A DNA stretch of 64,000 bases from Isurus oxyrinchus (lineage: Eukaryota): NCBI GenBank assembly GCA_026770705.1, contig JANJGN010000088.1, forward strand, positions 1,240,001 through 1,304,000. The letters are read 5' to 3'. The notes under the pieces are model-generated. The model searched no databases and had not been told where the DNA came from. It was given only the letters and a program-made list of their open reading frames with translations. Position 1 is the stretch's first letter; each line of letters begins with the position of its first letter. The position numbers and the translations under genes are program-made. This document shows, piece by piece, positions 13,811 to 51,225 of this stretch.

Positions 13811-13869
13811 TAGAGGTGGCGGAACAGTGGTATTTAGTGGGGAGGGAGTTGGCCAGGGAGTCCTCAACT

Positions 13870-15419: not shown

Positions 15420-18400
15420 AGGGTAAGGGTGCAGGTTAGTGACGAGGCTGATTGTTACCACAAAGTGAAAGGTAGGGACAGAGTGTGTGAACACCATATT
15501 GCACTGAAGAATTATATAAGAGTAGGGAAAGTCGACAATTGGGCAATTTTAAACGCTTTGTATCTGAATGCGTGTAGCGTTCGGAATAAAACTAATGAGT
15601 TAACAGTGCAAATAGAGATAACTAGGTATGATTAGGTGGCGATTACTGAGACGTGGTTACAGGGAGAACAGGTTTGGGAGTTGAATATCCAAGGGTACTC
15701 AGTGTTTCGGAAGGATTGGCTGGAAGGAATTGGAGGTGGTGTAGCTTTGTTAGCAAAGGAAGAGATCAGTGCTATCGTGAGGAATGATATAGGCACTGGA
15801 GAGCAAGACGTAGAGTCAGTTTGGATAGAAATAAGAAATAGCAAGGGAACGAAGTCCCTGGTGGGAGTTATCTATAGGTCCCCAAACAGTAGTTCAGCAG
15901 TAGGGCACTGTATAAACCAGGAAATACAGGGAGCATGTAAGAAAGGCAAGGCAATAATTATGGGTAATTTTAATATGCATATAGACTGGACAAATCAAAT
16001 TGGCAAGGGTAGCCTCGAGGGAGAGTTCATAGAGTGTATTAGAGTTTGTTACTTGGAACAATATGGAACCAACTAGGGAGCAGGCTATTCTGGATTTGGT
16101 TTTGTGTTATAAGATGGGATTAATTAATGATCACATAGTAAAGGATCCTCTAGGGAAGAGTGATCATAGCATGCTGGAATTTCAAGTTCATTTTGAGAGT
16201 GAGGAATGTGAGTCCCACACTCGTGTTCTCGAGTTAAACATAGGTAACTGCAAAGGCATGGGAGCAGATTTGGTCCTAGTGGACTGGGCAGGAAGACTGC
16301 AAGGTGGGATAGTTGATGAACAGTGATAGATATTTAAAGAGATATTCAATTACTCCCAAGTATAATATATTTCAAAGAGCAATAAAGATGGTAAGAGGAG
16401 GAAAAAGCATCCATTGCTAAGCAAGGAAGATAAAGATAACATTGAGCTAAAAACTAAGACATACCAAATTGCAAAATCAGTGGCAGGCTGGAAGATTGGG
16501 AAACTTTTAAAGATCAACAAAGGGTTACTGAAAAAAAATAAAAAGAGCAAAGGTAAATTATGAAAGAAAACTTGTGCAAAATGTAAAAACTGATAGCAAA
16601 AGCTTCTACAAGCATGTAAAAGAAAAGGGAGTAGCGAAAGTGAATGTTGGTCCCTTGGAGGATGAGACTGGGGAGTTAATAGTGGGGAATGCAGAAAGGG
16701 CAGAGACGCTGAATCAATATTTTGCCTCAGTTTTCACGGTGGAGGACACTAGTACCACCCTAATAGTAACAGGTAGTGCAGAGGGTATCGAGAAGGAGGT
16801 ACTGAGAACAATCTCCATCACTAGAGAAAAAATACTGAGAAAACTATTGGAATTAAAGGTTGAGAAGTCCCCAGGAGCTGATGGCCAACATCCCAGGGTC
16901 TTAAAGGAAGTGGCAGCAGAGATAGTGGATGCATTAGCTATAGTATTTCAAAGTTGCCTGGATTCTGGAAAGGTTCCAGTGGGTTGGAAAAATCTAATAT
17001 AATTCCCTTACTCAAAAAGCAGGGGAGGCAGAAAGTAGGAAACTCTAGACAAGTTAGTTTAACGTCTGCCGTTGGGCAATTGTTGTACTCCATTTTTAAG
17101 GAAGTAGTAATGGGGCATTTGGAAAGTCAAAATGCAATCCATCAGAGTCAGCATGGATTTATGAAGAGTAAATTATATTTGACTAATTTGCTAGAATTCT
17201 TTGAAGATGTGACAAGCAAAGTGGATAATGGGGAACCTATAGATGTAACATACCTGGACTTCCAGTGGGCCTTTGATTAGGTGCCGCACAAAAAATTAAC
17301 ATGCAAGGTAAGATCAAACGGGAGTTAGGGGTAATATATTAGCTTGGATAGAAGACTGGCTAACCAGTAGAAAGCAGAGAGTCGGGATAAATGAGTCTTT
17401 TTCTGGATGGCAAGCTGTAACTAGTGGGATGCCACAGGGTTCAGTCCTTGGGCACCAACTATTTACAATCTATATTAATGCCTTAGATTCACGGATAGAA
17501 GGTACTACAGCTAAATTTGGAGATGACATCAAAATAGGTGGGAAAGTAAGTTGAAATGAAGAGATAAGAAACTTACAAATGGATATGGACAGGTTAGGTG
17601 AATGGGCCAAAATTTGGCAGATGGAGTTATTCATTTTGGTTGGAAGAATAAAAAGGCGACATTATTTAAGTGGAGAGAAACTTCAGAATGCTTCAGTGCA
17701 GAGGGATCTGGGTGTCCTCGTGAATGAATCGCTGAAAGCTAGTATGCAGGTACAGCAGGTAATAAGGAAGGCAAATGGAATTGTGGCATTTGTTGCTAAA
17801 GGAATAGAGTATAAAAATAGGGAAGTGTTGTTGCAACTGTGTAAGGCATTGGTGAGACCTCACTTGGAGCACTGTGCACAGTTTTGGTCCCCTTACTTGA
17901 GGAAGGATGTAGTTGCATTGGAGACGGTTCAGAGGAGGTTCACTAAATTGATTCCAGAGATGCGGGGCTTATCTTATGAGGAGAGATTGAGCAGTTTAGG
18001 CCTATACTCGCTAAAGTTTAGAAGGATGAGAGGAGATCTAATTGAGGTATATAAGATGCTAAAGGGGATAGACAAAGTAGAGGTGGAGCAGATGTTTCCC
18101 CTTGTGGGGCATTCTAGAATGAGAGGCCATAGTTTTAGGCTAAGGGGCAGTAGATTTAAATCAGAGATGAGAAGGAATTACTTTTCTCAAAGGGTGGTGA
18201 ATCTGTGGAATTCACTACCTCAGAGAGCAGTGGATGCCGGGACGATGAATAAATTTAAGGAGGAGATAGATAGATTTTTAATTAGTAACGGGTTGAAAGG
18301 TTATGGGGAAAGGGCGGGAAATTGGAGTTGAGGCCAAAATTAGATCAGCCATGATTGTGTTGAATGGTGGGGCAGGCTCGAGGGGTTGAATTGCCTACTC

Positions 18401-27763: not shown

Positions 27764-28146
27764 CTATGAACAGGATTTGAAGCCTTCAGTTAGAACAAGT
27801 GACACATTGACCAGGGTGGGTTTGCTGTGAGATTTATTGATGCTCCTGAACAGATTTGTTGTGACTGACTCGTGTCCCACCACACAGGAGTAAGTGGTGC
27901 CGCTGTTCCACTCGTCTGCGGAGACTGTCAACCGACTGCCCGAGTTCCAGCCACTTCTGCCATCCTCGGTCACCGGCTGGTTCACAAATCCTGACTTCAG
28001 AAGGGTGTCGTTGGCCATCCAGGCCAGGTAGATCTCTGCAGGGGAGAATCCGGTGACCAGGCAAACCAGGGTCGCGGTGTGGTCTGTCTCCATCTCATCT
28101 TGTGAAGGGGGAAGGAGGTAGACTTGAGGGTGAGTCTTAATGTCAA
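27764..28146 (-). CDS. IgW: IgW terminal C exon (CH10) with long secretory tail
   Basis: C1-set Ig domain PQVYLLPPS...LVCLVTGFSP...W...YSCVVGHE, then tail KPTLVNVSLVLTEGFKSCS* with N-V-S sequon and penultimate Cys; TTCCAG acceptor. Confidence 0.95.
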
Positions 28147-28379
28147 CTGGAAACAGAGACAATGTAGGTTAGACTGAGCCCCCTCTCATCCTGCATACAC
28201 TCGACACGTTCTGCTTTTAACACAAATCTGGGCAACTTCTGCGTCCCCAGGGACACCTCCTCTATCAGAAAGTAAAGGCAATGACCTCTTTCTGGCCATT
28301 GTTGGGGTAGGGTGCAAGGGGCAGGATCATCAATCTTGCTGATTTTAAACTTGGGGAGGCAATGAACCATTGGGAATCT

Positions 28380-30790: not shown

Positions 30791-31093
30791 CTTTTACACT
30801 CTTTGCCCGTTTTGAAATGGGTGAGGATGAGGAACCACTTTGAGCAGAGCACACGAACTCCACCCCGCTGTCCCATTCCTCCGCAGTGGTTCGGAGTCGG
30901 CTGGTGACGATGTATTGTGTTCCTTCCTCTCTCTGTCGCTGGGTTGAAACCCCTTTACTTCGCTCCTGCCCGTTCATGTTCCAGGTGATGCGGACCTGGC
31001 TCGGATTGGAACGGACCACTATACACACCAGGGTAGCTGTCTTGTTGATCCAAACCTCTTCCATAAGTGGACTTTGGATAAAGACAGATATTT
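30791..31093 (-). pseudogene. IgW: IgW CH7 exon (type A): open frame but canonical splice acceptor destroyed
   Basis: Near-identical to CH3, but the acceptor reads CCCAAAATATC instead of CCCAG|AAATATC (1-nt deletion); donor intact. Confidence 0.8.
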
Positions 31094-33704
31094 TGGGAAG
31101 GGGAAATTATACAAATCAGAAGAACGGGCATTAATTAGTATCAGCCACTTGTGGCCTTCAATAGGAATCCAGTTTAATGTGTTTCACCTGGAGCTGCTAA
31201 TCGATCATGCGACACTGCACCTAAATATTTTAACAAGTTGAACATTAGAAAATCCCAGGGTTGTTTAAAAAATGTCTTGCAATTCTCAGTTTGCAAGTTT
31301 TGACTGAGAAAACATCGTAGGACAAGCAAGAACCCACTGGATCCCTTTTGAATCTGTCTGCCCTTACCGTGACCAAGAGATCCACAGTGAGGACTGCAGT
31401 TGAGTTGTGGGGTGAGTGGCTTTTAGATGCGACAATGTTACTAACAATGCAATCTCTGGTTTGTGAAATGGAGTGAAACAGAGATACAAACTGCTTAGCA
31501 AAAGGAACAATTCAGTAAATGCTTTTTCACTGCGTGGGGCTGTGGAATGATTTTTGATGTTGAGCACACTGAATGAACGAAGGGCCCATTTCTTTTAGCT
31601 GCGGCTCAGTTGATAGCACGCTCACCTCCGAATCAGAAGGTTGTGGATTCATGTCCCACAAAACTCAAAGTTGATGCCCCAGTGCAATACTGAGGGAGTG
31701 CTGCGCTGTCGGAGCACTGCCTTTTGGATGAGAATTGAAAATGAGGCGCCAAATGCCGCCTTAGGTAGATGTAAAAGAAGGACATCAGGGAAGATCGTTT
31801 CAATACCCTGATCAGTATATATCCCTCACTCAACATCACAAAAACAGGATCCCTGGTATTTGTCACATTACTCTTTGTGGGAACTTGCTGTGTATAAATT
31901 GGCTGCTGTGTTTCCAACTTTACAACAGTGGCTGCACTTCAAAAGTACTTCATTTTGGCATGTCCTGTGGTCACGAAAGATGACATGTAAATGTGAGCCT
32001 TTCTTTACTTTTCTTCCTCTAATTGGAGCCGGCCCGGATCACATCAGTTTTAAAATTCTTATCCTAATGTTCACGGCTTCACCTCTCCCTATCTCTGTAA
32101 TCTTCTCCAGCCCTACAGCCGCCCAGAAACTCTGCACAACTCTAGACACTTGTACATCCTTATCTTCCTTTCCCCCTGCATTGGTGGCTGTGTCTTCAGC
32201 CGTCTAGGCCCTAATGCCTGGAATTCACTGCCTAAACCTCAGCCACCTGCCACCTCTCTCCTCATTTGAGATGCTGCTTAAAACCTCTCTATTTTGCCAA
32301 GATTTTGGCCACAAGATCTCCTCCTGGAGGCTCAGCATCAGTTTTGCTTTGGCTTTGGTCCTGTGAAGCACCTTGGGATGTTTTACTACATTAAAGTCTC
32401 TATATCGATTCAAGTTATCATTGGTGATCATTCCCTGTCAAAGAAGGTTAGTTTGCATTGGCAGAGCAACTCCCATGAATCAGGGGAGTAACAGAAGTCC
32501 CCTCTTCCTGCAGGTTGGGGATCATTTCTGCATAACACGGACTTCCCCTCATTTCATTCCGGAGTTTACCGGCCTGGGAAGGGAATGATTGATTGAATTC
32601 TTCACATTTTCTCCTTTGTGCTCAACTCCCACGGATCGCAATCTCTTCAGATATCCCGCAGCTCACTGCGTGTTCTGTATACTGTTAACACAGACACACA
32701 CGCATATACACACAGACACGCACATGCACACACACATTCACTGCGTGAATCACAACTGCTTTGATCCACACTAATTGTTCTCGCTCAATGTAATGTTAAC
32801 ACTTACAGAGTGACTGGATTACTTCATCTGTGTCCATATCAAAACCTGTCATGAACACCACATATTGACTCTTCCGGCTGCAGTTTCAGCTGATGTTCAG
32901 TGTCTGTCTAATAGGACTGTGTCTTTTATTAGGTTATTTATTCTGTTTCTCTCTCTCTTGCCTTTTAAACAAAACCTTGATCAATTTCCTTCCAGATTGG
33001 GATTGCTCAGTATATTAATGATTAAGTCTAGGTGTTTTTCACGTTGATCTCCCATCATAAAACCTCATAGGGTTGGGAACAATCCCCTTATCACTGTAAA
33101 ATAATAACATTATTGGGCAAGAGGTGTTTAATTCCATTTATCCTTTGTGCGGAATTTTGAAAAAACACTTCCCTGACTTGGATTCCTGTGAACATTGAGC
33201 TCCTGACATTGACTGAGATGAGTATCCAGACTGGGAGAGTGATGGGAACTGTTTCTATTTCTGCAACCCAGAATTTCATCTAAAACAGACCAGGCCATTC
33301 AGGGCACCAGTTAAATCCTTGTGTGCTGAATCACCAACTTGCCTCAGGATCATTGAAGGGGGCCAATCCGGCTATTTCACTGGATCAATGAGTCCTACTC
33401 CAGCACCTCCCAACCTCCCGGCCTCTCTGGGTGACAAACAGGCTTCTAATCCTTTCCAACTTGAGAGTCAGACTTGAGAGACAATGGTCAGTCGGTGGGG
33501 TCGGGTCCCTATTCACTCTGACCCAGCGCAGGTCACAAAGAAATGACCATTCAGATAAGGAGTGGGTTGTCTGGGGGAACCCAAACTAGGGCTGTAACTT
33601 CTCGCAGTATTCACACTTTCATTCTGACGGATACCCTGGGATAGATTTGAACCTGCCAGATGGTTTGTAATAAAATTCAACGACCAATTCCATTCACAAA
33701 CTCA

Positions 33705-33856
33705 TCACTTTATTTCACATTTTTGTTGGTAGCAGTCATATTGGAGCTGATCACCATTTTTGAGGGTCACATTGAGGTTAGTCTGGTAGAGAAACTTCGG
33801 CATACAGTCAGAACAAGAACAAGGAGAACATGGAACTGGACGACATGCGTTTCCAC
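33705..33856 (-). CDS. IgW: Cysteine-rich secretory tail exon secA' (after CH6)
   Basis: TTCCAG|(G)GNACRPVPCSPCSCSDCMPKFLYQTNLNVTLKNGDQLQYDCYQQKCEIK*; 152 nt; AATAAA at 33709-33714. Confidence 0.85.
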
Positions 33857-34234
33857 CTGGAACTGGAAGAGTTGCAGATTTAAGTGTTATGCATTTTCAC
33901 CTCCCCTCCCCTCTACTGGGGAAGTGGGAGCTCCATGCAGCCCCTGGCCTCTGCTCTGTCCTGTCTTCTAAAGATCCTAAAAGAACTAGATCATGTAGAC
34001 ACTGACGAGCTGTTTTTACCTTGTCCAGAACAGTAAAATCAGTGGGTATGGCCTCTGTTTGAAGGGGGCAGGATGAACAATTGTTCTTTCTTTACTTGGC
34101 CTCTAGATTACTCGTCCACCTAGGTAATAACTACATCACCACACCTACGTTGTGAGTTTGAATTTGCCTGGCCCCAAGAGAATTTATATGAGAAGACCAT
34201 GATGTCAAGATTGGAATCAGGCCCAGGACCTTAC

Positions 34235-34552
34235 CTGGGACATTCTTCACCTCCTTGCTGATGACGAAGTTGGAAAGTGGATGAGACACTGTACAGCTGA
34301 AGGCTGATCCTGTCCTCCACTCCTCTGCACTCACAGTCAGGTAGTGCCTGACATTGAAAGTCCCTGCCTGTTCCAGAGCGGTGAGTCCAGCATGGGTGTT
34401 GGAGGAGATCGGAACACCATCTTTCTGCCAGGAGACGTGTAAGAGCTCTGGGTAGAATCCAGTGATCACACACTCGAGTGTGGCTGTGCTCTGATTCTTG
34501 ACCTCTTGGGCTGGGGGAGGCAGCAGCCTGACCTTGGGACTTTTTGGCTCGA
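34235..34552 (-). CDS. IgW: IgW CH6 exon (type B)
   Basis: EPKSPKVRLLPPPAQE...LECVITGFYP...FSCTVSHP; AG/GTAAG; 318 nt; protein identical to CH4. Confidence 0.93.
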
Positions 34553-34642: not shown

Positions 34643-34945
34643 CTTTTACACTCTTTACCCGTTTTGAAATGGGGGAGGATGAGGAACCACTTTGAGCAGA
34701 GCACACGAACTCCACCCCGCTGTCCCATTCCTCCGCAGTGGTTCGGAGTCGGCTGGTGACGATGTATTGTGTTCCTTCCTCTCTCTGTCGCTGGGTTGAA
34801 ACCCCTTTACTTCGCTCCTGCCCGTTCATGTTCCAGGTGATGCGGACTTGGCTCGGATCTGAACAGACCACTTTACACACCAGGGTAGCAGTCTTGTTGA
34901 TCCAAACCTCTTCAACAGAAGGATTTTGGATAAAAACTGACATTT
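34643..34945 (-). CDS. IgW: IgW CH5 exon (type A)
   Basis: MSVFIQNPSVEEVWINKTATLVCKVVC...W...FVCSAQ; CCCAG/GTGGG; 303 nt. Confidence 0.93.
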
Positions 34946-36656
34946 CTGGGAAGCGGAAAGTGAAAACTTCAGAAGGATTGACATTATCTGGTGTTGGCAG
35001 CCTTCAGAATTTTAGGGTGGTCTCTCCCTACTGATGTTGGTGGATGATAGGTCAACACAGAAGTGACTTTAAACTGCCACCTGTTTTAATCTCTTGAGTT
35101 AATACTGGGTGAAATACACAGCATTTAAGTTTGCAGCAAACTGAGCCTTTAGAAAATCCAAGGGTCGCTTTAGCAATGTCTAGTAATTCTTGACTCGCAT
35201 GTTATGATTGAGAAAACATAATCAGAGCACTAAGAACCTGCCGTATCCATTTTGAATTTGTTTGCTGTGCCTGTGACCAATAGGCCCACAGTGAGGAGTG
35301 CAATTGCATTCTAGGACTGAGCAACATTTAGATGTGACACTGTGAATCAATTGCAAAGCCCAGTTTGTTAAATGGAGTGAGGCAGATGCAGATCGCTTAG
35401 CAATGGAAACAATTGAATAAAGGCTTATTTACTTACAGCCCCTCCACCTCCCCGCTGTTGTATGGTTGATTTGTGACACTGAGCAGATTGAATCAATGAG
35501 GTGCCCTTTTTGGAGACAGCCTCGGATTGCCTCCATTTCAAAATCCTTATCCTAGTGTTGACATCTCGCTGGCCTTGCCTCTCCATATCTCTGTCACATT
35601 TGCCAGCCCAATAACCGTCTGAAAATGCTGCTTTCCACCAACATTAACCTCTTGTACACCCCACACTCCCTTCGCCCTAACAGTAGCAGCTGTCCATCAG
35701 CCATCTAGACCCTGCTCTGTGTAAGTCTATCCCTGAATCACAATTACATGGCCAACCCTCTCTCCTCCTTTAAGACGCTCCATAAAAACGACCTCTGCCC
35801 CCGCCTCCTCCTTTGGTTCTTTATCAATTTCTGTCCGATTACTCTCCAATGCAGAACTTTAGACCTCTGTCCACACTAAAGGTGATATATAAAAGCAGGT
35901 TATTGTAGATAAGTCTCTGTGAAGATAGATGATTAGTGTGCAGTGGCAGAGCAAGCCACAAATCAGATGTAGTGACAGCTCCTTTGCTGGAGCTCGGGGA
36001 TAATTTATGCAAAACGTTTACATCCCATCTCCAGTTTCATGTCCAAGAGACTAGATAAAAAGCAAATGTTTTACCGAGTACTTCATACGTTTTCCCCATT
36101 GCCAGCAGTTTCCCAAAAGACCATTGTCACTTCAGATATCCCGCAGCTCACTGCGTGTTCTGAACACTATTCACGCGCACAAACACACATTCACTGTGCG
36201 AATCACAACTCTTCTCCCTCTATATAATGAACAGTAGACACTTGGGTATGATGGGAAGGATGACAATTACTGCATCAGGATCAAATCCTTTCATGAGCTT
36301 CGAGAACCAACTCCTCCGGCTGCAGTTTCAGATGATGTCCTGTACACAGGGTGGTGGGATTTTCCAATGGCCATTTGGGTGGCTCGCCACATCTGCTGCA
36401 GAGGGACCCACTGCAGTGGAGCCAGAAAATCCCGGCCAGTGTCTGACAAGACCCTATCTTTCATTAACTTGAGATGGGTGAACGGAAGAGTTTATCACTT
36501 CTGCTGCCATGGATTTCCATCCAGAACCTACCGGATTGTACAGGAGCCAGATGGAACCCTGCAGCCGGTCTCAGCGGTTTGCCTCAGGACCAGCATCATT
36601 GAAATGGGACAGCCTTCTTTTACTGGCTCAACGTGATTCAATTCACAACCAGCCCA

Positions 36657-36829
36657 TCACCGAATTTCACACATTTGTTGACAACATTTATACTGGCATG
36701 GATCAGCATCAGAGAAGGTCATGTTACAGTTAATCTGATATAGGAACCTCAGCATCCAGCCAGAACAAGAATCAGTCAGACAAGAGCAAGCAGCATTTCC
36801 ACCCGGAACAGGAAGATTTGTGTTTCCAC
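36657..36829 (-). CDS. IgW: Divergent cysteine-rich secretory tail exon secB (after CH4)
   Basis: TTCTAG|(G)GNTNLPVPGGNAACSCLTDSCSGWMLRFLYQINCNMTFSDADPCQYKCCQQMCEIR*; 173 nt; frame open; homologous to secA. Confidence 0.78.
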
Positions 36830-37207
36830 CTAGAACTGGAAGAGCTGCGGATTTAAGTGTTATGCATTTTCACCTCCCCTCCCCTCTACTGGGGAAGTGG
36901 GAGCTCCATGCAGCCCCTGGCCTCTGCTCTGTCCTGTCTTCTAAAGATCCTAAAAGAACTGGATCATGTAGACACTGACAAGCTGTTGTTACCTTGTCCA
37001 GAACAGTAAAATCAGTGGGAATGGCCTCTGTTTGAAGGGGGCAGGATGAACAATCGTTCTTTCTTTACTTGGCCTCTAGATTACTCGTCCACCTAGGTAA
37101 TAACTACATCACCACACCTACGTTGTGAGTTTGAATTTGCCTGGCCCCAAGAGAATTTATATGAGAAGACCATGATGTCAAGATTGGAATCAGGCCCAGG
37201 ACCTTAC

Positions 37208-37525
37208 CTGGGACATTCTTCACCTCCTTGCTGATGACGAAGTTGGAAAGTGGATGAGACACTGTACAGCTGAAGGCTGATCCTGTCCTCCACTCCTCTG
37301 CACTCACAGTCAGGTAGTGCCTGACATTGAAAGTCCCTGCCTGTTCCAGAGCGGTGAGTCCAGCATGGGTGTTGGAGGAGATCGGAACACCATCTTTCTG
37401 CCAGGAGACGTGTAAGAGCTCCGGGTAGAATCCAGTGATCACACACTCGAGTGTGGCTGTGCTCTGATTCTTGACCTCTTGGGCTGGTGGAGGCAGCAGC
37501 CTAACCTTGGGACTTTTTGGCTCGA
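37208..37525 (-). CDS. IgW: IgW CH4 exon (type B)
   Basis: Ig C1 domain; TTCCAG/GTAAG; 318 nt; 89-nt intron from CH3. Confidence 0.93.
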
Positions 37526-37614
37526 CTGGAATAGACAGGCAAAACAAAGAAGCTGTTAAATTCCTTCCCTGAAAGTGAACAAAGTTAGTTATGTAATTTC
37601 TATCTCTCACCCAC

Positions 37615-37917
37615 CTTTTACACTCTTTGCCCGTTTTGAAATAGGAGAGGATGAGGAACCACTTTGAGCAGAGCACACGAATTCCACCCCGCTGTCCCAT
37701 TCCTCCGCAGTTGTTCGGAGTCGGCTGGTGACGATGTATTGTGTTCCTTCCTCTCTCTGTCGCTGGGTTGAAACCCCTTTACTTCGCTCCTGCCCGTTCA
37801 TGTTCCAGGTGATGCGGACCTGGCTCGGATTGGAACAGACCACTTTACACACCAGGGTAGCTGTTTTGTTGATCCAAACCTCTTCCATAAGTGGACTTTG
37901 GATAAAGACAGATATTT
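37615..37917 (-). CDS. IgW: IgW CH3 exon (type A)
   Basis: ISVFIQSPLMEEVWINKTATLVCKVVC...; CCCAG/GTGGG; 303 nt. Confidence 0.93.
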
Positions 37918-40527
37918 CTGGGAAGGGGAAATTATACAAATCAGAAGAACGGGCATTATTTAGTATCAGCCACTTGTGGCCCTCAATCAGAACCCAGTTT
38001 AATGTGTTTCACCTGGAGCTGCTAATCGATCATGCGACACTGCACCTAAATATTTTAACAAGTTGAACATTAGAAAATCCCAGGGTTGTTTAAAAAATGT
38101 CTTGCAATTCTCAGTTTGCAAGTTTTGACTGAGAAAACATCGTAGGACAAGCAAGAACCCACTGGATCCCTTTTGAATCTGTCTGCCCTTACCGTGACCA
38201 AGAGATCCACAGTGAGGACTGCAGTTGAGTTGTGGGGTGAGTGGCTTTTAGATGCGACAATGTTACTAACAATGCAATCTCTGGTTTGTGAAATGGAGTG
38301 AAACAGAGATACAAACTGCTTAGCAAAAGGAACAATTCAGTAAATGCTTTTTCACTGCGTGGGGCTGTGGAATGATTTTTGACATTGAGCACACTGAATG
38401 AACGAAGGGCCCATTTCTTTTAGCTGCGGCTCAATTGGTAGCATGCTCATCTCCGAATCAGAAGGTTGTGGATTCATGTCCCACAAAACTCAAAGTTGAT
38501 GCCCCAGTGCAATACTGAGGGAGTGCTGCACTGTCGAAGCACTGCCTTTTGGATGAGAATTGAAAATGAGGCGCCACATGCCGCCTTAGGTAGGCGTAAA
38601 AGAAGGACATCAGGGAAGCTTGTTCCAATACCCTGATCAGTATATATCCCTCACTCAACATCACAAAAACAGGATCCCTGGTATTTGTCACATTACTCTT
38701 TGTGGGAACTTGCTGTGTGTAAATTGGCTGCTGTGTTTCCAACTTTACAACAGTGGCTGCACTTCAAAAGTACTTCATTTTGGCATGTCCTGTGGTCACG
38801 GAAGATGACATGTAAATGTGAGCCTTTCTTTACTTTTCTTCCTCTAATTGGAGCCGGCCCGAATCACATCAGTTTTAAAATTCTTATCCTAATGTTCACG
38901 GCTTCACCTCTCCCTATCTCTGTAATCTTCTCCAGCCCTACAGCTGCCCAGAAACTCTGCACAACTCTAGACACTTGTACATCCTTATCTTCCTTTCCCC
39001 CGGCATTGGTGGCTGTGTCTTCAGCCGTCTAGGCCCTAATGCCTGGAATTCACTGCCTAAACCTCAGCCGCCTGCCACCTCTCTCCTCATTTGAGATGCT
39101 GCATAAAACCTCTCTATTTTGCCAAGATGTTGGCCACAAGATCTCCTCCTGGAGGCTCAGCATCAGTTTTGCTTTGGCTTTGGTCCTGTGAAGCACCTTG
39201 GGATGTTTTACTACATTAAAGTCTCTATATCGATTCAAGTTATCATTGGTGATCATTCCCTGTCAAAGAAGGTTAGTTTGCATTGGCAGAGCAACTCCCA
39301 TGAATCAGGGGAGTAACAGAAGTCCCCTCTTCCTGCAGGTTGGGGATCATTTCTGCATAACACGGACTTCCCCTCATTTCATTCCGGAGTTTACTGGCCT
39401 GGGAAGGGAATGATTGATTGAATTCTTCACATTTTCTCCTTTGTGCTCAACTCCCACGGATCACAATCTCTTCAGATATCCCGCAGCTCACTGCGTGTTC
39501 TGTATATTGTTAACACAGACACACACGCATATACACACAGACACACACATGCACACACACATTCACTGCGTGAATCACAACTGCTTTGATCCACACTAAT
39601 TGTTCTCGCTCAATGTAATGTTAACACTTACATAGAGACTGGATTACTCTATCTGTGTCCATATCAAAACCTGTCATGAACACCACATATTAAGTCTTCC
39701 GGCTGCAGTTTCAGCTGATGTTCAGTGTCTGTCTAATAGGACTGTGTCTTTTATTAGGCTATTTATTCTGTTTCTCTCTCTCTTGCCTTTTAAACAAAAC
39801 CTTGATCAATTTCCTTCCAGATTGGGATTGCTCAATATATTGATGATTAAGTCTAGGTGTTTTTCACGTTGATCTTCCAAGATAAAACCTCATAGGGTTG
39901 GGAACAGTCCCCTTATCCCTGTAAAATAATAACATTATTGGGCAAGAGGTGTTTAATTCCATTTACCCTTTGTGCGGAATTTGACAAAACACTTCCCCAA
40001 CTTGGATTCCTGTGAACATTGAGCTCCTGTCATTGACTAAGATGAGGATCCAGACTGGGAGAGTGATGGGAACTGTTTCTATTTCTGCAACCCAGAATTT
40101 CATCTAAAACAGACCAGGCATTTCAGGGCACCAGTTAAATCCTTGTGTGCTGAATCACCAACTTGCCTCAGGATCATTGAAGGGGGCCAATCCGGCCATT
40201 TCACTGGATCAATGAGTCCCACTCCAGCATCTCCCAACCTCCCGGCCTCTCTGGGTGACAAACAGGCTTCTAATCCTTTCCAACTTGAGTCAGACTTGAG
40301 AGACAACGGTCAGTCGGTGGGGTCAGGTCCCTATTCACTCTGTCCCAGCGTAGGTCACAAAAAAAATGACCATTTAGATCAGGAGAGGGTTGTCTGGGGG
40401 AACCCAAACTAGGGCTGTAACTTCTTGCAGTATTCACACTTTCATTCTGATGGATACCCTGGGATAGATTTGAACCTGCCAGATGGTTTGTAATAAAATT
40501 CAACGGCCAATTCCATTCACAAACTCA

Positions 40528-40679
40528 TCACTTTATTTCACATTTTTGTTGGTAGCAGTCATATTGGAGCTGATCACCATTTTTGAGGGTCACATTGAGG
40601 TTAGTCTGGTAGAGAAACTTCGGCATACAGTCAGAACAAGAACAGGGAGAACATGGAACTGGACGACATGCGTTTCCAC
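40528..40679 (-). CDS. IgW: Cysteine-rich secretory tail exon secA of short IgW (after CH2)
   Basis: TTCCAG|(G)GNACRPVPCSPCSCSDCMPKFLYQTNLNVTLKNGDQLQYDCYQQKCEIK*; 7 Cys, N-V-T sequon, AATAAA at 40532-40537; position matches the known 2-CH short IgW with a Cys-rich tail. Confidence 0.88.
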
Positions 40680-41354
40680 CTGGAACCGGAAGAGTTGCAG
40701 ATTTAAGTGTTATACATTTTCACCTCCCCTACTCTTGTGCTGGGTAAGTGGGAACTCCACATGGCCTCAAAACTCTGCTCAGTCCTGTCTTTGTAGGATC
40801 CTAAAGGAACCTGATCAGGTGGACAATGAAAAGCTGGTTCACCTTGTCCAGAATAGGACGATCAGGGGAAATGACTTGTGCTTGAAGGGGGAAGGGCGGG
40901 GGATTCATTTCAAAATTAATGCAGCAATGGATTGATCAATCTCTGGAACAGGTTCAGGAGATGGTGAAGCAGATCCATGCAATTCCTTCAAATGCAAAAT
41001 TGGAAAGATTTCTTTCTTAATACAGCAGTTGGGAGGGAGTAGAAAAGGAAAAGTTAGGAGGCGATTTCAACCGTGGATGGTAATAGATAGGTTGGTATCA
41101 GATGGATCATTTCACAGCCTGTCCCATTTTCATTTCTAGTCACAGAGAGTCACATTGAATGAGGGTGTAAACAGGCAGCTGACCCATTTCCAGCAGTTTC
41201 ACTGCTTGCTGCGTTAGGTTAAAATTACTCCCCTTAAGGGTAGCTTCAATAACAAAACACAAAATACTGAACATTCACCTTTCCCAACAGGGTTGATATT
41301 AGTGACAGCAATTCACAGATTGAGGGTGGGCATTGGCACGTTAAGTTAATAAGT

Positions 41355-41575
41355 CAAAAACAGAAAATGCTGGAAAAAACCCAGCAGGTCTGACAGCATC
41401 TGTGGGTAGAGAAACTGAGTTAACATTTCGAGCCCAATATGACTGAAAAAAGGCCACACAGACTCGAAACATTAACTCTGTTTCTCTCCCCGCAGATGCT
41501 GTCAGACCTGATGAGTTTTTCCAACGTTTTAGTTTTTTTTTAGTTTTCCAGCATCTGCGGTATTTTGCTTTTATC
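41355..41575. repeat. Palindromic Penelope-like terminal repeat (related pieces at ~61430-61535 and 61915-62045)
   Basis: aaaatgctggaaaa..cagcaggtctgacagcatctg ... cagatgctgtcagacctgatgagtttttcca inverted arms. The family assignment is from recall. Confidence 0.55.
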
Positions 41576-41640
41576 TTAAGTTAATACCAGTCTGCATTAC
41601 TGATGATATATTCATTTCTCCCCCCTCAGGCACCACTTAC

Positions 41641-41949
41641 CCCCTTCGTTTCTCGTGTATCTCATGCTGATCCTCTTATTGAATCTTGAAAGTGTGTGGG
41701 ACACTTCACAGGCGTACTCAACCCCTTTCTTCCATTCCGCCACAGGAACAGTCAGGTAAGTGACTGTTTCAAATGTAGTGTCTGTGCTTTGTCGGGAAGT
41801 CAGAACATTACCCGCTTTGTCCTCCTGGCCTTTCTTCCAGGAAACCTTTATGCCGTCGGGATCAAATCCGGATATCATACAGCCCAGGACAGTGGTAGTT
41901 TGATTGTAGACAAACTCCGCGGATGGAACAAGGGTGGTGACAATCGGCG
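41641..41949 (-). CDS. IgW: IgW CH2 exon
   Basis: PIVTTLVPS...LGCMISGFDP...W...YACEVSH; TCCAG/GTAAGT; 309 nt. Confidence 0.94.
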
Positions 41950-42349
41950 CTGGAGAGGTAAAACATTGCAATGTTTCAGATTACACTGTTGTTTTGCCAC
42001 AAGAAAGATGTACTCTATTCCCTCAGCATCTCGAGTAACTGTCACGATGCCAACTCCCATTCATCATCAATTTGACTGGGTTCCCTCTGACCCTCCCCTG
42101 AAATATTTGCTAATCCTTTCAGTTCTAGATTCCGGCAAATGGGCTCAACCTTTCAAATTTTAGATCCTGAGTTTCTTACTACACACGTTCAACTTTTTCT
42201 TCCTGGTACCTGACAATCTCACAGTGCCGATAACCAGTCTGAGATTGGCACAAATAGGGTAGCACTTCATAAAACTGAGACTTTGGGGATTTCAGGCAGA
42301 ATTTACAATTCTCCATAATAATGGGGACAAATTTAATCTCGACTTGACA

Positions 42350-44404: not shown

Positions 44405-46150
44405 CAGTGTAGAGGGAGCTTTACACTGTATCTAACCGCGAGCTGTACCTGTCCTGGGTGTGTTTGATGGGGACGGTGTAGAGGGAGCTTTACTCTGTAT
44501 CTAACCCCATGCTGTACCTGTCCTGGGAGTGTTTGATGGGGACAGTGTAGAGGGAGCTTTACACTGTATCTAACCGCGAGCTGTACCTGTCCTGGGTGTG
44601 TTTGATGGGGACAGTGTAGAGGGAGCTTTACTCTGTATCTAACCCTGTGCTGTACCTGTCCTGTGTGTGTTTGATGGGGACAGTGTAGAGGGAGCTTTAC
44701 TCTGTATCTAACCCCGTGCTGTATCTGCCCAGGGAGTGTTTGATGGGGACAGTGTAGAGGGAGCTTTACTCTGTATCTAACCGCGAGCTGTACCTGTCCT
44801 GGGTGTGTTTGATGGGGACGGTGTAGAGGGAGCTTTACTCTATATCTAACCCCGTGCTGTACCTGTCCTGGCAGTGTTTGATGGGGACAGTGTAGAGGGA
44901 GCTTTACTCTGTATCTAACCCTGTGCTGTACCTGTCCTGTGTGTGTTTGATGGGGACAGTGTAGAGGGAGCTTTACTCTGTATCTAACCCCGTGCTGTAT
45001 CTGCCCAGGGAGTGTTTGATGGGGACAGTGTAGAGGGAACTTTACTATGTATCTAACCGCGAGCTGTACCTTTCCTGGGTGTGTTTGATGGGGACAGTGT
45101 AGAGGGAGCTTTACTCTGTATCTGACCCCGTGCTATACCTGTCCTGGGAGTGTTTGATGGGGACAGTGGAGAGGGAGCTTTACACTGTATCTAACCGCGA
45201 GCTGTACCTGTCCTGGGTGTGTTTGATGGGGACAGTCTAGAGGGAGCTTTACTCTGTATCGAACCCCGTGCTGTACCTGTCCTGGGAGTGGTTGTTGGGG
45301 ACAGTGTAGACGGAGCTTTACTCTGTATCTAACACCGTGCTGTACCTTTCCTGGGAGTGTTTGATGGGGACAGTGTAGAGGGAGATTTACTCTGTATCTA
45401 ACCCCATGCTGTACCTGTCCTGGGAGTGTTTGATGGGGAAAGTGTAGAGGGAGCTTTACTCTGTATCTAACCCCGTGCTGTACCTGCCCTGGGAGTGTTT
45501 GATGGGGACAGTGTAGAGGGAGCTTTACTCTGTATCTAACCCCGTGCTGTACCTGCTGTGGGACTGTTTGATGGGGACAGTGTAGAGGGAGCTTTACTCT
45601 GTATCTTACCCCGTGCTGTATCTGTCCTGGGAGTGTTTGATGGGGACAGTGTAGAGGGTGCTTTTCTCTGTATCTAACCCCGTGCTGTACCTGCCCTGGG
45701 AGTGTTTGATGGGGACAGTGTAGAGGGAGCTTTACTCTGTATCTTACCCCGTGCTGTATCTGTCCTGGGAGTGTTTGATGGGGACAGTGTAGAGGGAGGT
45801 TTACTCTGTATCTAACCCCGTGCTGTACCTGTCCTGGGAGTGTTTGATGGGACAGTGTAGAGGGAGGTTTACTCTGTATCTAACCCTGTGCTGTACCTGC
45901 CCTGGGAGTGTTTGATGGGGACAGTGTAGAGGGAGCTTTACTCTGTATCTTACCCGGTGCTGTATCTGTCCTGGGAGTGTTTGATGGGGACAGTGTAGAG
46001 GGAGCATTACTCTGTATCTAACCCCGTGCTGTACCTGTCCTGGAAGTGTTTGATGGGGATAGTGTAGAGGGAGATTTACTCTGTATCGAACCCCATGCTG
46101 TTCTTGTCTTGGGAGTGTTTGATGTGATGGTGTCGAGGGAGATTTACTAA
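44405..46150. repeat. 69-bp minisatellite, ~25 copies, just upstream of CH1
   Basis: Unit cagtgtagagggagctttactctgtatctaaccccgtgctgtacctgtcctgggagtgtttgatgggga; period 69 (44405 to 44474). Confidence 0.96.
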
Positions 46151-46209: not shown

Positions 46210-49200
46210 TCATAGATGATGGGGAGGGTTTATACTAACTTGGCTGGGGGATGGGATCCTGTGAGGAGGTTCAGCAGGGAAAGATGCACAGCCAAAATTA
46301 GAAGAGAGAGCAAGTGGGTCAGGAAGGCATAGAAATTATAGGCCAGTTAAGGCACAACGGAGTTTGGCAAGGTTGGATGGTATTTATTTTAATGCAAGGA
46401 GTCTGACGAATCAGGCAGATGAGTTGAGGACATAAATTGACACATGGAAGCATGATGTCATTGCTGTCACAGAGACATCATGGTTGAGAGAGGGGCAGGA
46501 TTGGCAGCTCAATAATCCAGGATGTAGGGTCTTCAGGTGATATAGGGAAGGAGGTAAAAGAGGAATGGGTATCGCATTATTGATCAAGGAATCAATTACA
46601 GCAGTAAGGAGGGATGACATCTTAGAAGGCTCCTCAAATGAAGGCATATGTGTAGAACCTAAAAACAAAAAAGAGGCAATCACATTGCTGGGAGTGTGCT
46701 ATAGGCCCCCAAACAGTCAGAGAGAAATATGAGAGAGAGCAGATATGTCGGCAAATTTCAGAGAAGTGTAAAAGTAATAGAGGAGTAATGGTGAGGGATT
46801 TCGACTTCCCCAACGTTAACTGGGTTAGTCATAGTGTGGTAGGTTTAGAGGGAGCGGAATTCTTAAAATGCATCCAGGAGAGCTTTTTAAGCCAGTACGT
46901 AGAAGGTTCTACAAGAGAGGGGACGGCCCTGGACTTAATTTTAGGGAATGTAACCGGGCAAGTGGTAGAGGTATCAGTGGTGGAGATAGCGATCATAACT
47001 CCATTAGATTCAAGGTTCTTATGGAAAAGGACAAGGATGGGCCAGAAATCATAATTCTAAATTGGGGGAAGACCGATTTTAATAAGATCAGGTATGGTTT
47101 GGCCAGAGTGGACTGGGAGCAGCTACTTTTAGGCAAATCTGCTTCAGAGCAGTGGAACTTATTCAAGAAAGAAATAGGGAGAGCACAGGGCCAACATATT
47201 CCAGTAAAGATAAAGGGTGGGACCAACAAATCCAGGGAACTCTGGATGTTGAAGGATATACAGGATTGGATAAAGAGAAAAAGGGAGGCTTATGGCAGAT
47301 ACCGAGGGCTCAAAACACAGAAGCCCTAGAGTATAGAATGTGTAGGGGGGAACTTAAAAAGGAAATTAGGAGAGCAAAAATGAGGCATGAGAAAACGTTG
47401 ACAGGTTAAAATAAAGGAAAATCCCAAGTTATTTTACAAATACATTAAGAGTAAAATGATAACTCGGAAAGAATAGGGCCCATTGTGGTAATTTGTGTGT
47501 GGAGCCAGAAGACATAGGTAGGGTTCTAAATGAATACTTTGTGTTGATGTTGACAAGTGAGAGGGATGACATGGGTATGGAAAACAGGCAGAAGGACTGA
47601 GATATGATTAAAGAAATTAGCATCGTTCTAAGTGGCCAGGCAGGCTTAAAAGTAGATAAATCTCCAGGCCCAGATGAATTGTATCCTAGGCTGTTGAGTG
47701 AGGCAAGGGAGGAGATAGCAGGGGCGCTGGCAATAATTTTCAATACTCCCTAGCCACAGGAGAGGTACCAGAGGACTGGAGGATGGCCAATGTGATACTG
47801 TTATTCAAGATGGGAGGCAGGCATAAACCAGGGAACTACAGGCCAGTCAGTCTAACCTCAGTGGTGGGGAAACTATTGGAAGCAATTCTGAGGGACAGAA
47901 TTAATCTACACTTGGAGAGACAGGGATTAATCAAGGACAGAGAGAATGGTTTTGTTAAGGGGAGGTCATGTCTGACCAATTTGTCTGAATTTTTCAAAGA
48001 GGTGACCAGATGTGTAGATGATGGCAATGCTTTGACATTGCCTACTTAGACCTCAGCAAGGCTTTTGATAAGGTCCTGCATGAGAGACTGATAATGAAGG
48101 TAAGAGCCCATGGGATCCAAGGCAATTTGGCAAATTGGATCCAGAATTGGTTGAGTGGCCGGAAGCAGAGGGTGATGGCTGAGTCCAGTGGGGTTCCACA
48201 GGGATCGGTCTTGGGTCCCTTGCTGTTTGTGGTGTATATAAACGATTTAGACGTGAATGTAGGAGGGTTGATCAGTAAGTTCGCAGATGACACGAAAATT
48301 GGTGGGGTGGTAAATAGTGAGGAGGATAACTTTAGATTCCAGGTGGACATAGATGGGCTGGTCAGATGGGCTGATTAGTGGCAAATGGATTTTAATCCGG
48401 ATAAGTATGAGGTGATGCACTTGGGCAGGACAAACAAGGCACGGGAAGTATATTCATATAGCAAGCAATGTTTTAAGTGTTAGTGCCAGCATTTTGTAGT
48501 AAACTGCATATTTTTACTATGCACAGAAGGAGCTGAAATGTACAGTATTTATAGAAAATGTCAACATTGATAGCCAATTGCAATGTTAGATCTTATTAAA
48601 CGGTACCATTGAATGGTAGGACCCTGGGAAGTACCGAGGATCAGAGGGACCTTGGTGTGCATGTCCAACGGTCCCTTAAGGTAGCGGGACAGGTAGATAA
48701 GGTGGTTAGGAAGGCATATGGGATACTTTGCTTTATTAGCCAAGGCAGAGAATATAAGAACAGGGATGTTATGCTGCAACTATAAAAAACGCTGGTTAGG
48801 CCACAGCTAGAGTATTGCGTGCAGTTCTAGAATCCGTATTGTAGGAAGGATGTGATTGCACTCGAGAGAGAGCAGAGGACATTTACCAGGATGTTGCCTG
48901 GGCTGGAGAGTTTTAGTTATGAGGAGAGATTGGATAGACTGGGGTTATTTTCCCTGGAGCAGAGGAGATTGAGGGGGGGACGTGATTGAGGTATATAAAA
49001 TGATGAGGGGCTTAGATAGGGTAGACAGGAAGGAACATTTCCCCTTGGTGGAGGGATCATTAACCAGGGGGCATAGATTTAAAGTAAGGGGCAGGAGGTT
49101 TAGAGGGGATGTGAGGAAGACTTTTTTCACCCAGAGGGTAGTGGGAATCTGGAACTCATTGCCTGAAAGGGTGGTAGAGGCAGAAATCCTCATAACATTT

Positions 49201-49358
49201 AAGAAGTATTTGGATGTGCACTTGCAATGCCATGGCATAGAAGGCTATGGGCCTAGTGCTGGAAAATGGGATTAGAATGGTTAGGTACTTGTTTGACCGG
49301 CGCAGACTCAATGGGCTGAAGGGCCTTTTTCTGTGCTGTAGACCTTGCTGACTCTAAG
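46210..49358 (+). mobile_element. CR1 LINE, near full-length inactivated ORF2, with a ~155-bp unrelated AT-rich insert at ~48450-48605
   Basis: YFNARS, DFDFP, GNYRPVSLTS, GVPQGSVLGP, KFADDTK, GIWNSLP motifs and a CR1 3' UTR. Confidence 0.93.
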
Positions 49359-50149: not shown

Positions 50150-51225
50150 GCTGATCAATAAGTAACATTCACCCCACACAGGTGCCAGGCAATGACCATC
50201 TCCAACAAGAGAGAATCTACCCTCATCCCTTGACATTCAATGGCATTGCTATCGCTGAATCCCCCACTATCAACGTCCTGGGGATTACCATTGACCAGAA
50301 ACTGAGCTAGAACATACTGTGGCTACAAGAGCAAGTTAGATCCTGGGAATCCTGTGGAGAGTAACTCACCTCCAGACTCCCCAAAACCTGTCCACCATCT
50401 ACAAGGCACAATTCAGGAGTGTGATGGGATACTCTCCACTTGCTGAATGAGTGCAGCTCCCACAACATTCGAGAAGCTCGACACCGTCCAGGACAAAGCA
50501 GCCCCACTTGATTGGCACCTCACCCACAAACATTCACTTCTTCGACCACTGACGCACAGTGGCAGCAGTGTGCGTACCATCTAAAAGATGCACTGCAGGA
50601 ACTCACCAAGGCTCCTCAGACAGCACCTTCCAAACCCACGACCACTACCATCTAGATGGACAAGGGCAGCAGACACATGGGGAACACCCACCTCCTGGAA
50701 GTTTCTCTCCGAGCCCCTCACCTTCCCGACTTGGAAATATATCGGCTGTTCCTTCACTGTCGCTGGGTCAAAATCCTGGAACTCCCTCCCTAACAGCGCT
50801 GTGGGTGTACCTACACCACAGGGGACAAGATCCTGGAACTCCCTCCCTAACAGCGCCGTGGGTGTACCTACACTACAGGGGACAAAATCCTGGAACTCCC
50901 TCCCTAACAGCGCTGTGCGTGTACCTACACCACAGGGGACAAAATCCTGGAACTCCCTCCCTAACAGCGCTTTGGGTGTACCTACACCACACAGGGGACA
51001 AAATCCTGGAACTCTCTCCCTAACAGCACTGTGGGTGTACCTACACCACAGAGACAAAATCCTGGACCTCCCTCCCTAACAGCGCTGTGGGTGTACCTAC
51101 ACCACACGGACTGCAGTGGTTCAAGAAACCAGCTTACCACCACCACCTCTAGGGGCAATTAGGGATGGGCAATAAATGCTAGCCTGACCAGCAAAGCCCA
51201 CATCCCATAAATGAATGAAAAAAGA
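50150..51225 (+). mobile_element. LINE family B 3' fragment containing a 57-bp x6 internal tandem expansion (50769-51106)
   Basis: Collinear with 59800-60570; unit caaaatcctggaactccctccctaacagcgctgtgggtgtacctacaccacagggga starts at 50769, 50826, 50883, 50940, 50999, 51055. Confidence 0.85.

What the first reader, a model, noticed from the sequence alone, without database searches (positions are those of the whole stretch)
36657..36829. secB: a strongly diverged but still open paralogous tail with a rewired cysteine pattern and no canonical poly(A) signal
Seen: secB (57 aa, 8 Cys) aligns with secA (50 aa, 7 Cys) at GGN..PVP, SCS, FLYQ.N.N.T, QY.C.QQ.CEI. It carries an in-frame 21-nt length difference, keeps the N-x-T sequon (NMT vs NVT), and shifts Cys towards the C-terminal half. 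In secA the AATAAA overlaps the last codons (GAAATAAAG); secB reads GAAATTCGG, leaving only AGTAAA at 36619-36624. Inference: keeping the frame, stop position and sequon despite heavy divergence suggests selection for a distinct tail (different disulfide-linked multimer or partner), expressed at a lower level.
Basis: partly seen in the sequence, partly recalled or inferred. Interest (0 to 1): 0.78.

Follow-up and report, generated by a model that had tools for sequence, protein, structure and literature searches.

The report
Second secretory-tail exon of shark IgW
This is an intact extra "secreted tail" exon after the fourth constant exon of a shark IgW antibody gene, an already described kind of exon, whose rear half has changed a lot and whose use is unproven.

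Summary
On the minus strand, 36829..36657 is an open phase-1 exon. It has an AG acceptor, 57 codons, 8 Cys, an NMT sequon and a TGA stop. It lies 378 nt after a CH4-type exon of an IgW (IgD-like) heavy-chain cluster. Two secA exons (40679..40528 and 33856..33705) encode one identical 50-aa, 7-Cys tail.

secB and secA share 27/50 residues and 68.7% of bases, with a 21-nt in-frame gap. secB has lost the AATAAA that overlaps secA's last codons. Only AGTAAA (36624-36619) follows within 1.58 kb.

New here: secB keeps the ancestral length. It aligns without gaps to the horn-shark IgW secreted tail (28/57, E 2e-18). Its N-half is ancestral-like. Its C-half changed at 9 of 18 sites invariant in four CH2-linked tails and gained three Cys.

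Evidence for constraint is modest: dN/dS 0.36 (0.13-0.86), and three or more new Cys by drift has P about 0.015. The exon is no better conserved than its introns, and no transcript was found.

Interspersed IgW secretory exons and a four-domain secreted form are already described for nurse shark. This scan met three-tail IgW clusters before, elsewhere in this genome (s1-864001, s1-868797). Verdict: real and probably usable, but a known kind.

The parts
36657..36829 (-). secB exon. A phase-1 terminal exon of 173 nt: 57 codons once the last base of the upstream CH exon is counted, then TGA at 36659-36657. It has 8 Cys and an NMT sequon.
   Evidence: Gapless 28/57 match to the horn-shark IgW secreted-form tail, E 2e-18.
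36830..37207 (-). Intron between CH4a and secB (378 nt). GT donor at 37207-37206 and AG acceptor at 36831-36830. Further AGs lie at about -8/-7 and -18/-17 of the acceptor.
   Evidence: It is 98% identical (392/400, with the end of CH4) to the stretch in front of secA2.
37208..37525 (-). CH4a exon (Ig C1-set). Its donor would splice either to secB or, skipping it, to CH3b.
   Evidence: Pfam C1-set E 1.4e-19. Boundaries.
36619..36624 (-). AGTAAA, the only poly(A)-type hexamer near secB. It starts 32 nt after the stop and is followed by CA dinucleotides and a G/T-rich stretch.
   Evidence: Function is inferred, not shown.
40528..40679 (-). secA1 exon after CH2: 50 aa, 7 Cys, NVT sequon. AATAAA at 40537-40532 overlaps the last codons.
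33705..33856 (-). secA2 exon after CH4b. It encodes the same protein as secA1, with 1 synonymous base difference. AATAAA lies at 33714-33709. It is a mosaic: the upstream intron is like secB's, while the exon and the downstream intron are like secA1's.
34643..34945 (-). CH3b exon, the next acceptor when secB is skipped.
34946..36656 (-). Intron after secB. It is an old paralogue of the intron after secA1/secA2, 42-73% identical in the blocks of 40 or more aligned bases. A stretch of about 270 nt that follows the secA stop is missing here.
41641..41971 (-). CH2 exon. The upstream bound is that of the ORF only. The last exon base is 41641 and the donor is GT at 41640-41639. This donor serves secA1.

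Best explanation
secB is the second of three secretory (alternative terminal) exons interleaved among the constant exons of a shark IgW (IgD-orthologous) heavy-chain cluster on the minus strand.

The layout is VH, CH1, CH2, secA1, CH3a, CH4a, secB, CH3b, CH4b, secA2, CH3c, CH4c, CH5, and CH6 with the ordinary tailpiece.

Proposed working (inferred). The CH4a donor (last exon base 37208) splices to the acceptor in front of 36829. This completes a Gly codon. Translation runs 57 codons to TGA. Cleavage and polyadenylation follow the weak AGTAAA at 36624-36619. The product would be a secreted V-C1-C2-C3-C4 IgW with a Cys-rich tail.

Shown. secB is an old paralogue of the CH2-linked IgW-short tail. 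It keeps that tail's ancestral 57-aa length and N-half. Its C-half lost Cys25, gained Cys35, Cys45 and Cys50, and kept the N-x-T sequon and the C-terminal QY.C.QQ.CEI motif. secB and its downstream intron escaped the homogenisation that made the CH3/CH4 pairs 95-100% alike and secA1 and secA2 identical.

My reading is that the exon is still usable and under partial constraint, giving the four-domain form a tail chemically distinct from the two- and six-domain forms.
For: - **Gene context.** Ig C1-set exons flank it, and ten CH-type ORFs lie on the minus strand.
- **Exon anatomy.** AG acceptor, phase 1 matching the CH4a donor, open frame and stop.
- **Homology to an expressed tail.** A profile search of 1.84 billion representatives gave 3 hits at E <= 0.001. 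Two are IgW CH2-plus-tail proteins: horn shark P83743 (E 4e-21) and a sawshark 'splenic IgW, short secretory form-like' protein (E 1.8e-14). secB alone against horn-shark form 1/3 gives 28/57, gapless, E 2e-18.
- **The acceptor is used in a relative.** In run X3 (organism A, guessed RNA) contigs stop matching exactly at 36830 and continue into sequence that reads as the end of a CH2-type exon (RISMRY motif). In that relative a CH exon is therefore spliced at this same acceptor position, onto a tail whose first ~50 nt are at least 90% like secB.
- **Signs of constraint.** dN/dS 0.36, 95% 0.13-0.86. 16 amino-acid changes against a simulated mean of 19.9, P 0.034. Three or more new Cys, P 0.015.
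- **Literature.** Secreted IgW forms with 2, 4, 6 or 8 C domains made by alternative splicing are stated in passages of PMC4279169, PMC5192425 and PMC6795676. 'Two interspersed secretory exons' in nurse shark IgW (Zhang, Du Pasquier and Hsu 2013) is recalled only; that paper is not held.
Against: - **No transcript evidence for secB in this species.** 0 of 19 listed runs is on record as RNA. 8 small guessed-RNA runs with the same species label hold none of the sampled words. The three runs that hold the stretch behave as DNA, with contigs across introns, and show no CH4-secB joint.
- **No protein with a CH4-plus-secB-type tail** in any protein search. All relatives found are CH2-linked.
- **The canonical AATAAA is gone**, and about 270 nt of the secA 3' region is missing.
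- **No excess conservation.** Exon identity to secA (68.7%) is not above the flanking non-coding identity: 79% upstream, 42-73% in the alignable downstream blocks.
- **Heavy change in the C-half.** 9 of 18 sites invariant in four other tails are changed, with 12 secB-only changes against 0 secA-only, P 0.0005. This fits decay as well as new function.
- **An open frame is weak evidence.** It is expected by chance in 7-24% of neutral trials.
Confidence: 0.58

Rival explanations
1. secB is a decaying relic. It is an old copy of the IgW-short tail exon that lost its poly(A) signal and is now skipped. It drifts at the neutral rate and is open only by chance.
For: - Exon identity to secA (68.7%) is no higher than in the neighbouring non-coding DNA (79% upstream; 42-73% downstream).
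- AATAAA is replaced, and the next AATAAA or ATTAAA is 1.58 kb away.
- A stretch of about 270 nt of the secA 3' region is missing.
- 9 of 18 otherwise invariant C-half sites are changed, including Cys25.
- An open frame with the stop kept is expected in 7-24% of neutral trials.
- No transcript or protein was found.
Against: - dN/dS 0.36, with an upper bound of 0.86.
- Fewer amino-acid changes than neutral, P 0.034, and three new Cys each needing 2-3 base changes, P 0.015.
- The acceptor, the sequon and the two C-terminal Cys are kept.
- The N-half is at least 90% identical in bases to an expressed tail of a relative, although the surrounding introns are far more diverged.
- The transcript searches were weak: small runs, contigs only.
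Confidence: 0.32
2. secB is used as a terminal exon but not through AGTAAA. Transcripts would run on to a distant signal (for example ATTAAA at 35090) or be cleaved at a non-hexamer site, giving a long 3' UTR. Alternatively the exon is spliced at one of the upstream AGs, adding two residues.
For: The only nearby hexamer is a weak variant. AG dinucleotides lie at about -8/-7 and -18/-17 of the acceptor.
Against: Nothing observed favours it. The relative's contig breaks exactly at 36830, not at the upstream AGs. Behind AGTAAA there is a plausible CA and G/T-rich context (by eye).
Confidence: 0.07

Closest known systems
Interspersed secretory exons of nurse shark IgW clusters (Zhang, Du Pasquier and Hsu, J Immunol 2013; recalled, paper not held). 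Secreted IgW forms with 2, 4, 6 or 8 C domains are stated in the reviews PMC4279169, PMC5192425 and PMC6795676 (passages read).
   Same: A separate small exon lies in the intron after an even-numbered C exon of an IgW cluster. It encodes a tail with its own stop, so that the choice of splice and poly(A) site sets the number of C domains in the secreted chain.
   Different: This cluster has three such exons and ten C exons, against six to eight C exons in the reviews' account. The middle exon is a strongly diverged paralogue and the outer two are identical. I could not read the nurse-shark sequences, so I cannot say whether its second exon is the orthologue of secB or shows the same Cys pattern.
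IgW-short (two C domain) Cys-rich secretory tail, e.g. Heterodontus francisci 'IgW chain C region, secreted form 1/3 and 2' (P83742, P83743) and Pristiophorus japonicus 'splenic IgW, short secretory form-like'.
   Same: The length is the same (57 aa in horn shark). The N-half is shared (..NLPVPGGN..C.C...SCSG), and so are the FLYQ/N-x-T block and the QY.C.QQ.C.I.K/R end. The BLASTP match is 28/57, gapless, E 2e-18.
   Different: Those tails follow CH2; secB follows a CH4-type exon. secB lacks Cys25 and has extra Cys at 35, 45 and 50. It differs at 9 of the 18 C-half sites that the four CH2-linked tails share.
Classical mu/alpha-type secretory tailpiece (here the end of CH6, 27764-28162)
   Same: It sits at the C-terminus of a secreted heavy chain and carries an N-linked sequon and Cys, and so is a candidate for covalent assembly.
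   Different: The classical tailpiece is continuous with the last C exon and short (about 19 residues after the last Ig domain here, from the CH6 translation), with a Cys near the end. secB is a separate 57-codon exon with 8 Cys. BLASTP found no similarity to the CH6 tail region.

Membership tests
Interspersed secretory exon of cartilaginous-fish IgW | Lies inside an IgW heavy-chain cluster, in the intron behind a C-domain exon | tested here: met
   It lies 378 nt behind CH4a and 1.7 kb before CH3b. C1-set domains are confirmed.
Interspersed secretory exon of cartilaginous-fish IgW | Splice acceptor in the phase of the upstream C-exon donor (phase 1), with an open frame to its own stop | tested here: met
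   AG at 36831-36830. The CH4a donor leaves one base (G) that completes GGT. 57 codons run to TGA.
Interspersed secretory exon of cartilaginous-fish IgW | Encodes a tail homologous to the Cys-rich tail known from IgW-short cDNA or protein | tested here: met
   Horn-shark P83742 tail: 28/57, gapless, E 2e-18. Profile hits at E 4e-21 and 1.8e-14.
Interspersed secretory exon of cartilaginous-fish IgW | Poly(A) signal directly behind or overlapping the stop | tested here: inconclusive
   secA has AATAAA overlapping its last codons. secB has only the variant AGTAAA, 32 nt after the stop.
Interspersed secretory exon of cartilaginous-fish IgW | Transcripts joining the upstream C exon to the tail exon | tested here: inconclusive
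   No RNA holder was found. The runs laid were DNA-like and showed no joint. A relative's guessed-RNA contig joins a CH2-type exon to a secB-like N-half at the same acceptor. No CH4-secB join was seen.
Classical mu/alpha secretory tailpiece | Short extension continuous with the last C exon, with a sequon and a Cys near the end | tested here: not met
   secB is a separate exon of 57 codons. Its last Cys is 4 residues from the end. There is no BLASTP similarity to the CH6 tail. Only the sequon is shared.

The most novel reading that the evidence does not exclude
The tail ladder alternates (A after CH2, B after CH4, A after CH6-equivalent). A single choice of splice and poly(A) site would then set both antibody length and tail chemistry. 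On this reading secB is a neofunctionalised 8-Cys tail: an even number of Cys, three new ones in the C-half, and the Cys25 shared by all four CH2-linked tails lost. It would give the four-domain IgW a different assembly state or partner from the two- and six-domain forms. It would have been kept apart from the gene conversion that homogenised everything around it.
Probability: 0.22. Interest if true: 0.55.

Novelty: new member of a known kind. Interest (0 to 1): 0.3.

Why it matters
IgW/IgD is the least understood ancient antibody class. Sharks make it in several lengths by choosing among terminal exons.

If the tail after CH4 is functionally distinct from the tail after CH2, the isoforms would differ in more than length. 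They could differ in covalent assembly, and that is testable with recombinant chains.

If secB is a relic, it shows that tail exons can drop out of the ladder while the neighbouring C exons are kept uniform by conversion.

Either way the kind of element is already described for nurse shark, so the gain is incremental.

Tried and rejected
**Expression**
- The look-up of sequencing runs found no run on record as RNA.
- Read laying showed that the three holders are DNA-like. It showed only 40 of 235 base differences, so I could not read the variant secB copies those runs hold.

**Orthologues**
- Word search with secB was blank.
- Word search with CH4a gave only a 57%-identical genomic read-through ORF, P0005.
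- Word search with the sawshark tail region found only itself.
- The profile search found two CH2-linked tails and one unrelated repeat protein, P0003, which I left out of the alignments.
The secB branch could not be tested on its own.

**Structure**
- A PDB profile search was blank at E <= 10.
- Pfam has no family for either tail.

**Papers**
- Zhang 2013, Rumfelt 2004, Hsu 2016 and Matz 2021 are not held.
- Searches found reviews only.
- I therefore cannot say whether a diverged four-domain tail is in print. Supplements are closed.

**Rejected ideas**
- secB as a copy that simply diverged from secA: rejected, because the horn-shark and sawshark tails show that secA carries the deletion.
- Kinship to the classical tailpiece: rejected, no similarity.

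Full report
**What is there.** The window's minus strand carries one IgW-type (IgD-orthologous) heavy-chain cluster. ORF listing and in-frame translation show a VH near 55.4 kb and ten C-type exons. Three tested exons (CH2, CH4a, CH6) match Pfam C1-set at E 1e-15 to 6e-21.

Reading 5' to 3' on the minus strand the order is:
- CH1 (about 44.2-43.9 kb)
- CH2 (ends 41641)
- secA1 (40679..40528)
- CH3a (37917..37615)
- CH4a (37525..37208)
- secB (36829..36657)
- CH3b (34945..34643)
- CH4b (34552..34235)
- secA2 (33856..33705)
- CH3c, CH4c, CH5
- CH6, with an ordinary tailpiece

The species name is coded in the run tables. Earlier notes of this scan call the genome a Scyliorhinus catshark; I did not verify that.

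**Check of the observation.**
- secB has an AG acceptor (36831-36830) and is phase 1. The last base of CH4a (G, 37208) completes GGT.
- It runs 57 codons with 8 Cys to TGA.
- secA1 and secA2 encode one identical 50-aa tail with 7 Cys and differ by one synonymous base.
- secA and secB share 27 of 50 aligned residues and 103 of 150 bases, with one 21-nt in-frame gap. NVT and NMT sit in the same columns.
- secA's AATAAA overlaps its last codons. secB reads AATTCG there. The only AATAAA, ATTAAA or AGTAAA within 1.58 kb is AGTAAA at 36624-36619.

**Polarity of the differences.** A profile of secA plus secB was searched against 1.84 billion representative proteins. It gave 3 hits at E <= 0.001.
- Two are IgW CH2-plus-tail proteins: horn shark 'IgW chain C region, secreted form 2', with its cluster mate 'form 1/3', and a sawshark 'splenic IgW, short secretory form-like' protein.
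- The third (P0003) is an unrelated repeat protein. I dropped it.

The horn-shark tail is 57 aa long. secB aligns to it without a gap (28/57, E 2e-18). The 7-codon difference is therefore a loss in secA, not a gain in secB.

In the five-tail alignment:
- In the N-half (columns 1-24) secB matches horn shark at 16/24 and sawshark at 10/11.
- In the C-half (columns 25-57) secB matches horn shark at only 12/33, against 24/33 for secA.
- Taking horn shark as reference, the C-half has 12 secB-only changes and 0 secA-only changes (binomial P 0.0005).
- Of the 18 C-half sites invariant in the four CH2-linked tails, secB keeps 9 and changes 9: C25W, P27L, K28R, T33I, L35C, V37M, L39F, G42A, K57R.
- The Cys pattern is indeed rewired. 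It loses 20 and 25 and gains 35, 45 and 50.

This test assumes that the foreign tails are fair references. If the secA/secB split is older than these species, part of the asymmetry is just orthology of secA to those tails.

**Surroundings and history.** Three sec-to-CH4 units were aligned.
- Units 1 and 3 are 94-100% alike over the sec exon, the intron and CH3.
- Units 1 and 2 are 95-100% alike over CH3, CH4 and the stretch behind CH4.
- Unit 2's sec exon and following intron are only 42-73% like the others in blocks with 40 or more aligned bases, and have large gaps.
- The 400 nt in front of secA2 are 98% (392/400) like those in front of secB. The secA2 exon itself is secA1-like. A recombination or conversion joint therefore lies within about 25 nt of the acceptor.
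- Behind the stop, about 35 nt of secB still align with secA. Then about 270 nt of secA sequence have no counterpart. Homology resumes in a block that holds secB's AGTAAA (AGTGAA in secA).

I infer that secB and its intron are an old duplicate that escaped the recent homogenisation. The exact order of events cannot be told from one locus.

**Selection or drift?**

For constraint:
- NG86 over 50 codons gives dN 0.32, dS 0.88 and dN/dS 0.36, bootstrap 95% 0.13-0.86.
- In neutral simulations of the C-half with the observed 33 base changes, the 16 amino-acid changes seen are fewer than the mean of 19.9 (P 0.034).
- In the same simulations three or more new Cys appear in 1.5% of trials. Each real new Cys needed 2-3 base changes. 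This test was chosen after seeing the data.
- The first ~50 nt of secB are at least 90% identical to an expressed tail of a relative, much more than the introns would predict.

Against constraint:
- The pairwise dN/dS mixes the constrained secA lineage with secB.
- dN (0.32) is about equal to the Jukes-Cantor distance of the upstream intron (0.25). It is at or just below the range I compute from the downstream identities (about 0.35-0.66 for the better-aligned blocks; my arithmetic).
- The frame stays open with its stop in 7-24% of neutral trials.
- The sequon is kept in 19% of neutral trials.

The balance leans to partial constraint but does not settle it.

**Expression.** The look-up of sequencing runs on 36500-36840 listed 19 runs, none on record as RNA.
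- 6 rows (three data sets filed twice, organism C) hold 0.49 of the words.
- 5 rows (organisms A and B) hold 0.06.
- 8 small guessed-RNA rows with the same species label as the holders hold 0.00.

Four runs were laid on 36300-42000. The three holders cover introns evenly at depth of about 10 and show no CH4-secB joint, so they are DNA. Their copy differs by about 2.5% (7 letters in 280 over 36582-36861), so it comes from another individual or another cluster. Only two of these differences were listed (36627 and 36634, in the 3' flank).

Run X3 (organism A, guessed RNA) has depth 1237 in one bin over the 5' part of secB. It breaks exactly at 36830 into sequence that I read by eye as the end of a CH2-type exon (RISMRY motif). 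In that relative the same acceptor position is therefore used, behind CH2, for a tail with a secB-like N-half. That supports the acceptor and the ancestral nature of secB's N-half. It does not show use of secB here.

**How it most likely works.** Steps shown:
- the exon, its phase, its homology and its context.

Steps inferred:
- Splicing of CH4a to secB competes with splicing to CH3b.
- The transcript ends after AGTAAA. Behind that hexamer lie CA dinucleotides and a G/T-rich stretch (by eye).
- The weak hexamer would make this the minor choice.
- The product is a four-C-domain secreted IgW whose 8-Cys glycosylated tail differs from the 7-Cys tail of the two- and six-domain forms.

What the tail binds or how it multimerises is unknown. 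There is no Pfam family, no PDB relative and no similarity to the CH6 tailpiece.

**Comparison with what is known.** I read passages of three reviews.
- PMC4279169 states that IgW has at least seven secreted forms with 2, 4, 6 or 8 C domains made by alternative splicing. It also states that the two-domain form has a long Cys-rich tail unlike other Ig tails.
- PMC5192425 states that nurse shark IgW clusters have six to eight C exons.

The primary paper that, as I recall, reports 'two interspersed secretory exons' (Zhang, Du Pasquier and Hsu 2013) is not held. I could not compare sequences. I also cannot claim that the diverged tail is unreported: searches found nothing on it, and supplements are closed.

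This scan has already met three-tail IgW clusters elsewhere in this genome. s1-864001 was followed up and judged known in kind, with use unproven. s1-868797 and s1-871038 are further notes.

**Verdict.** The feature is real and correctly described. It is a member of a known kind, the interspersed IgW secretory exon. The added points are:
- secB keeps the ancestral length and N-half.
- Its C-half has left the constraint pattern of the CH2-linked tails, with three new Cys.
- It escaped local homogenisation.
- Its canonical poly(A) signal is gone.

Function as a distinct tail is plausible (about 0.58) but unproven. Decay is the main rival (about 0.32).

Noticed in passing
window 44405-46148: A tandem array of 25 copies of a 69-bp unit (91% matches) lies upstream of CH1 in the IgW cluster, between the 53.5-55.1 kb V-D-D-D-J stretch of scan note s1-869093 (not checked by me) and CH1. 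Its role is unknown. It is worth comparing with the other IgW clusters, given reports of switching between shark clusters.
   Followed up: partly
window 31093-31101: In front of CH3c, the equivalent of the seventh C exon, the motif that ends in the acceptor AG in CH3a and CH3b ends in AA. This agrees with scan note s1-869189. If the exon cannot be spliced, the longest isoform would change.
   Followed up: partly
window 33857-34256 and 33705-33856: secA2 is a mosaic. The 400 nt before it are 98% like those before secB, while the exon and the following intron are 94-100% like secA1. The joint lies within about 25 nt of the acceptor.
   Followed up: yes
window 40230-40500 (approx.): About 270 nt behind the secA1 stop (and likewise behind secA2) have no counterpart behind secB. 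This is either an insertion in the secA lineage or a deletion in secB. Homology resumes in the block that carries secB's AGTAAA.
   Followed up: partly
window 38401-39355 and 41266-41647: Contig depth in DNA runs reaches tens to hundreds of thousands, with many loose ends. These are high-copy interspersed repeats inside the secA1-CH3a intron and the CH2-secA1 intron.
   Followed up: no
window 36779-36830 (run X3, organism A): A relative's guessed-RNA contigs join a CH2-type exon end to a tail whose first ~50 nt are at least 90% like secB and then continue differently. By eye that continuation reads as a further C.C..CSCS-type stretch like the horn-shark tail.
   Followed up: partly
window 12000-18400 and 46700-49300: ORFs that by eye look like reverse-transcriptase/endonuclease pieces of retrotransposons (no family scan run) lie downstream of the cluster and upstream of CH1.
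   Followed up: no
window 885-2519 and 50765-51106: A 544-aa ORF made of short tandem repeats lies at 885-2519. A 57-bp x 6 tandem repeat lies at 50765-51106.
   Followed up: no
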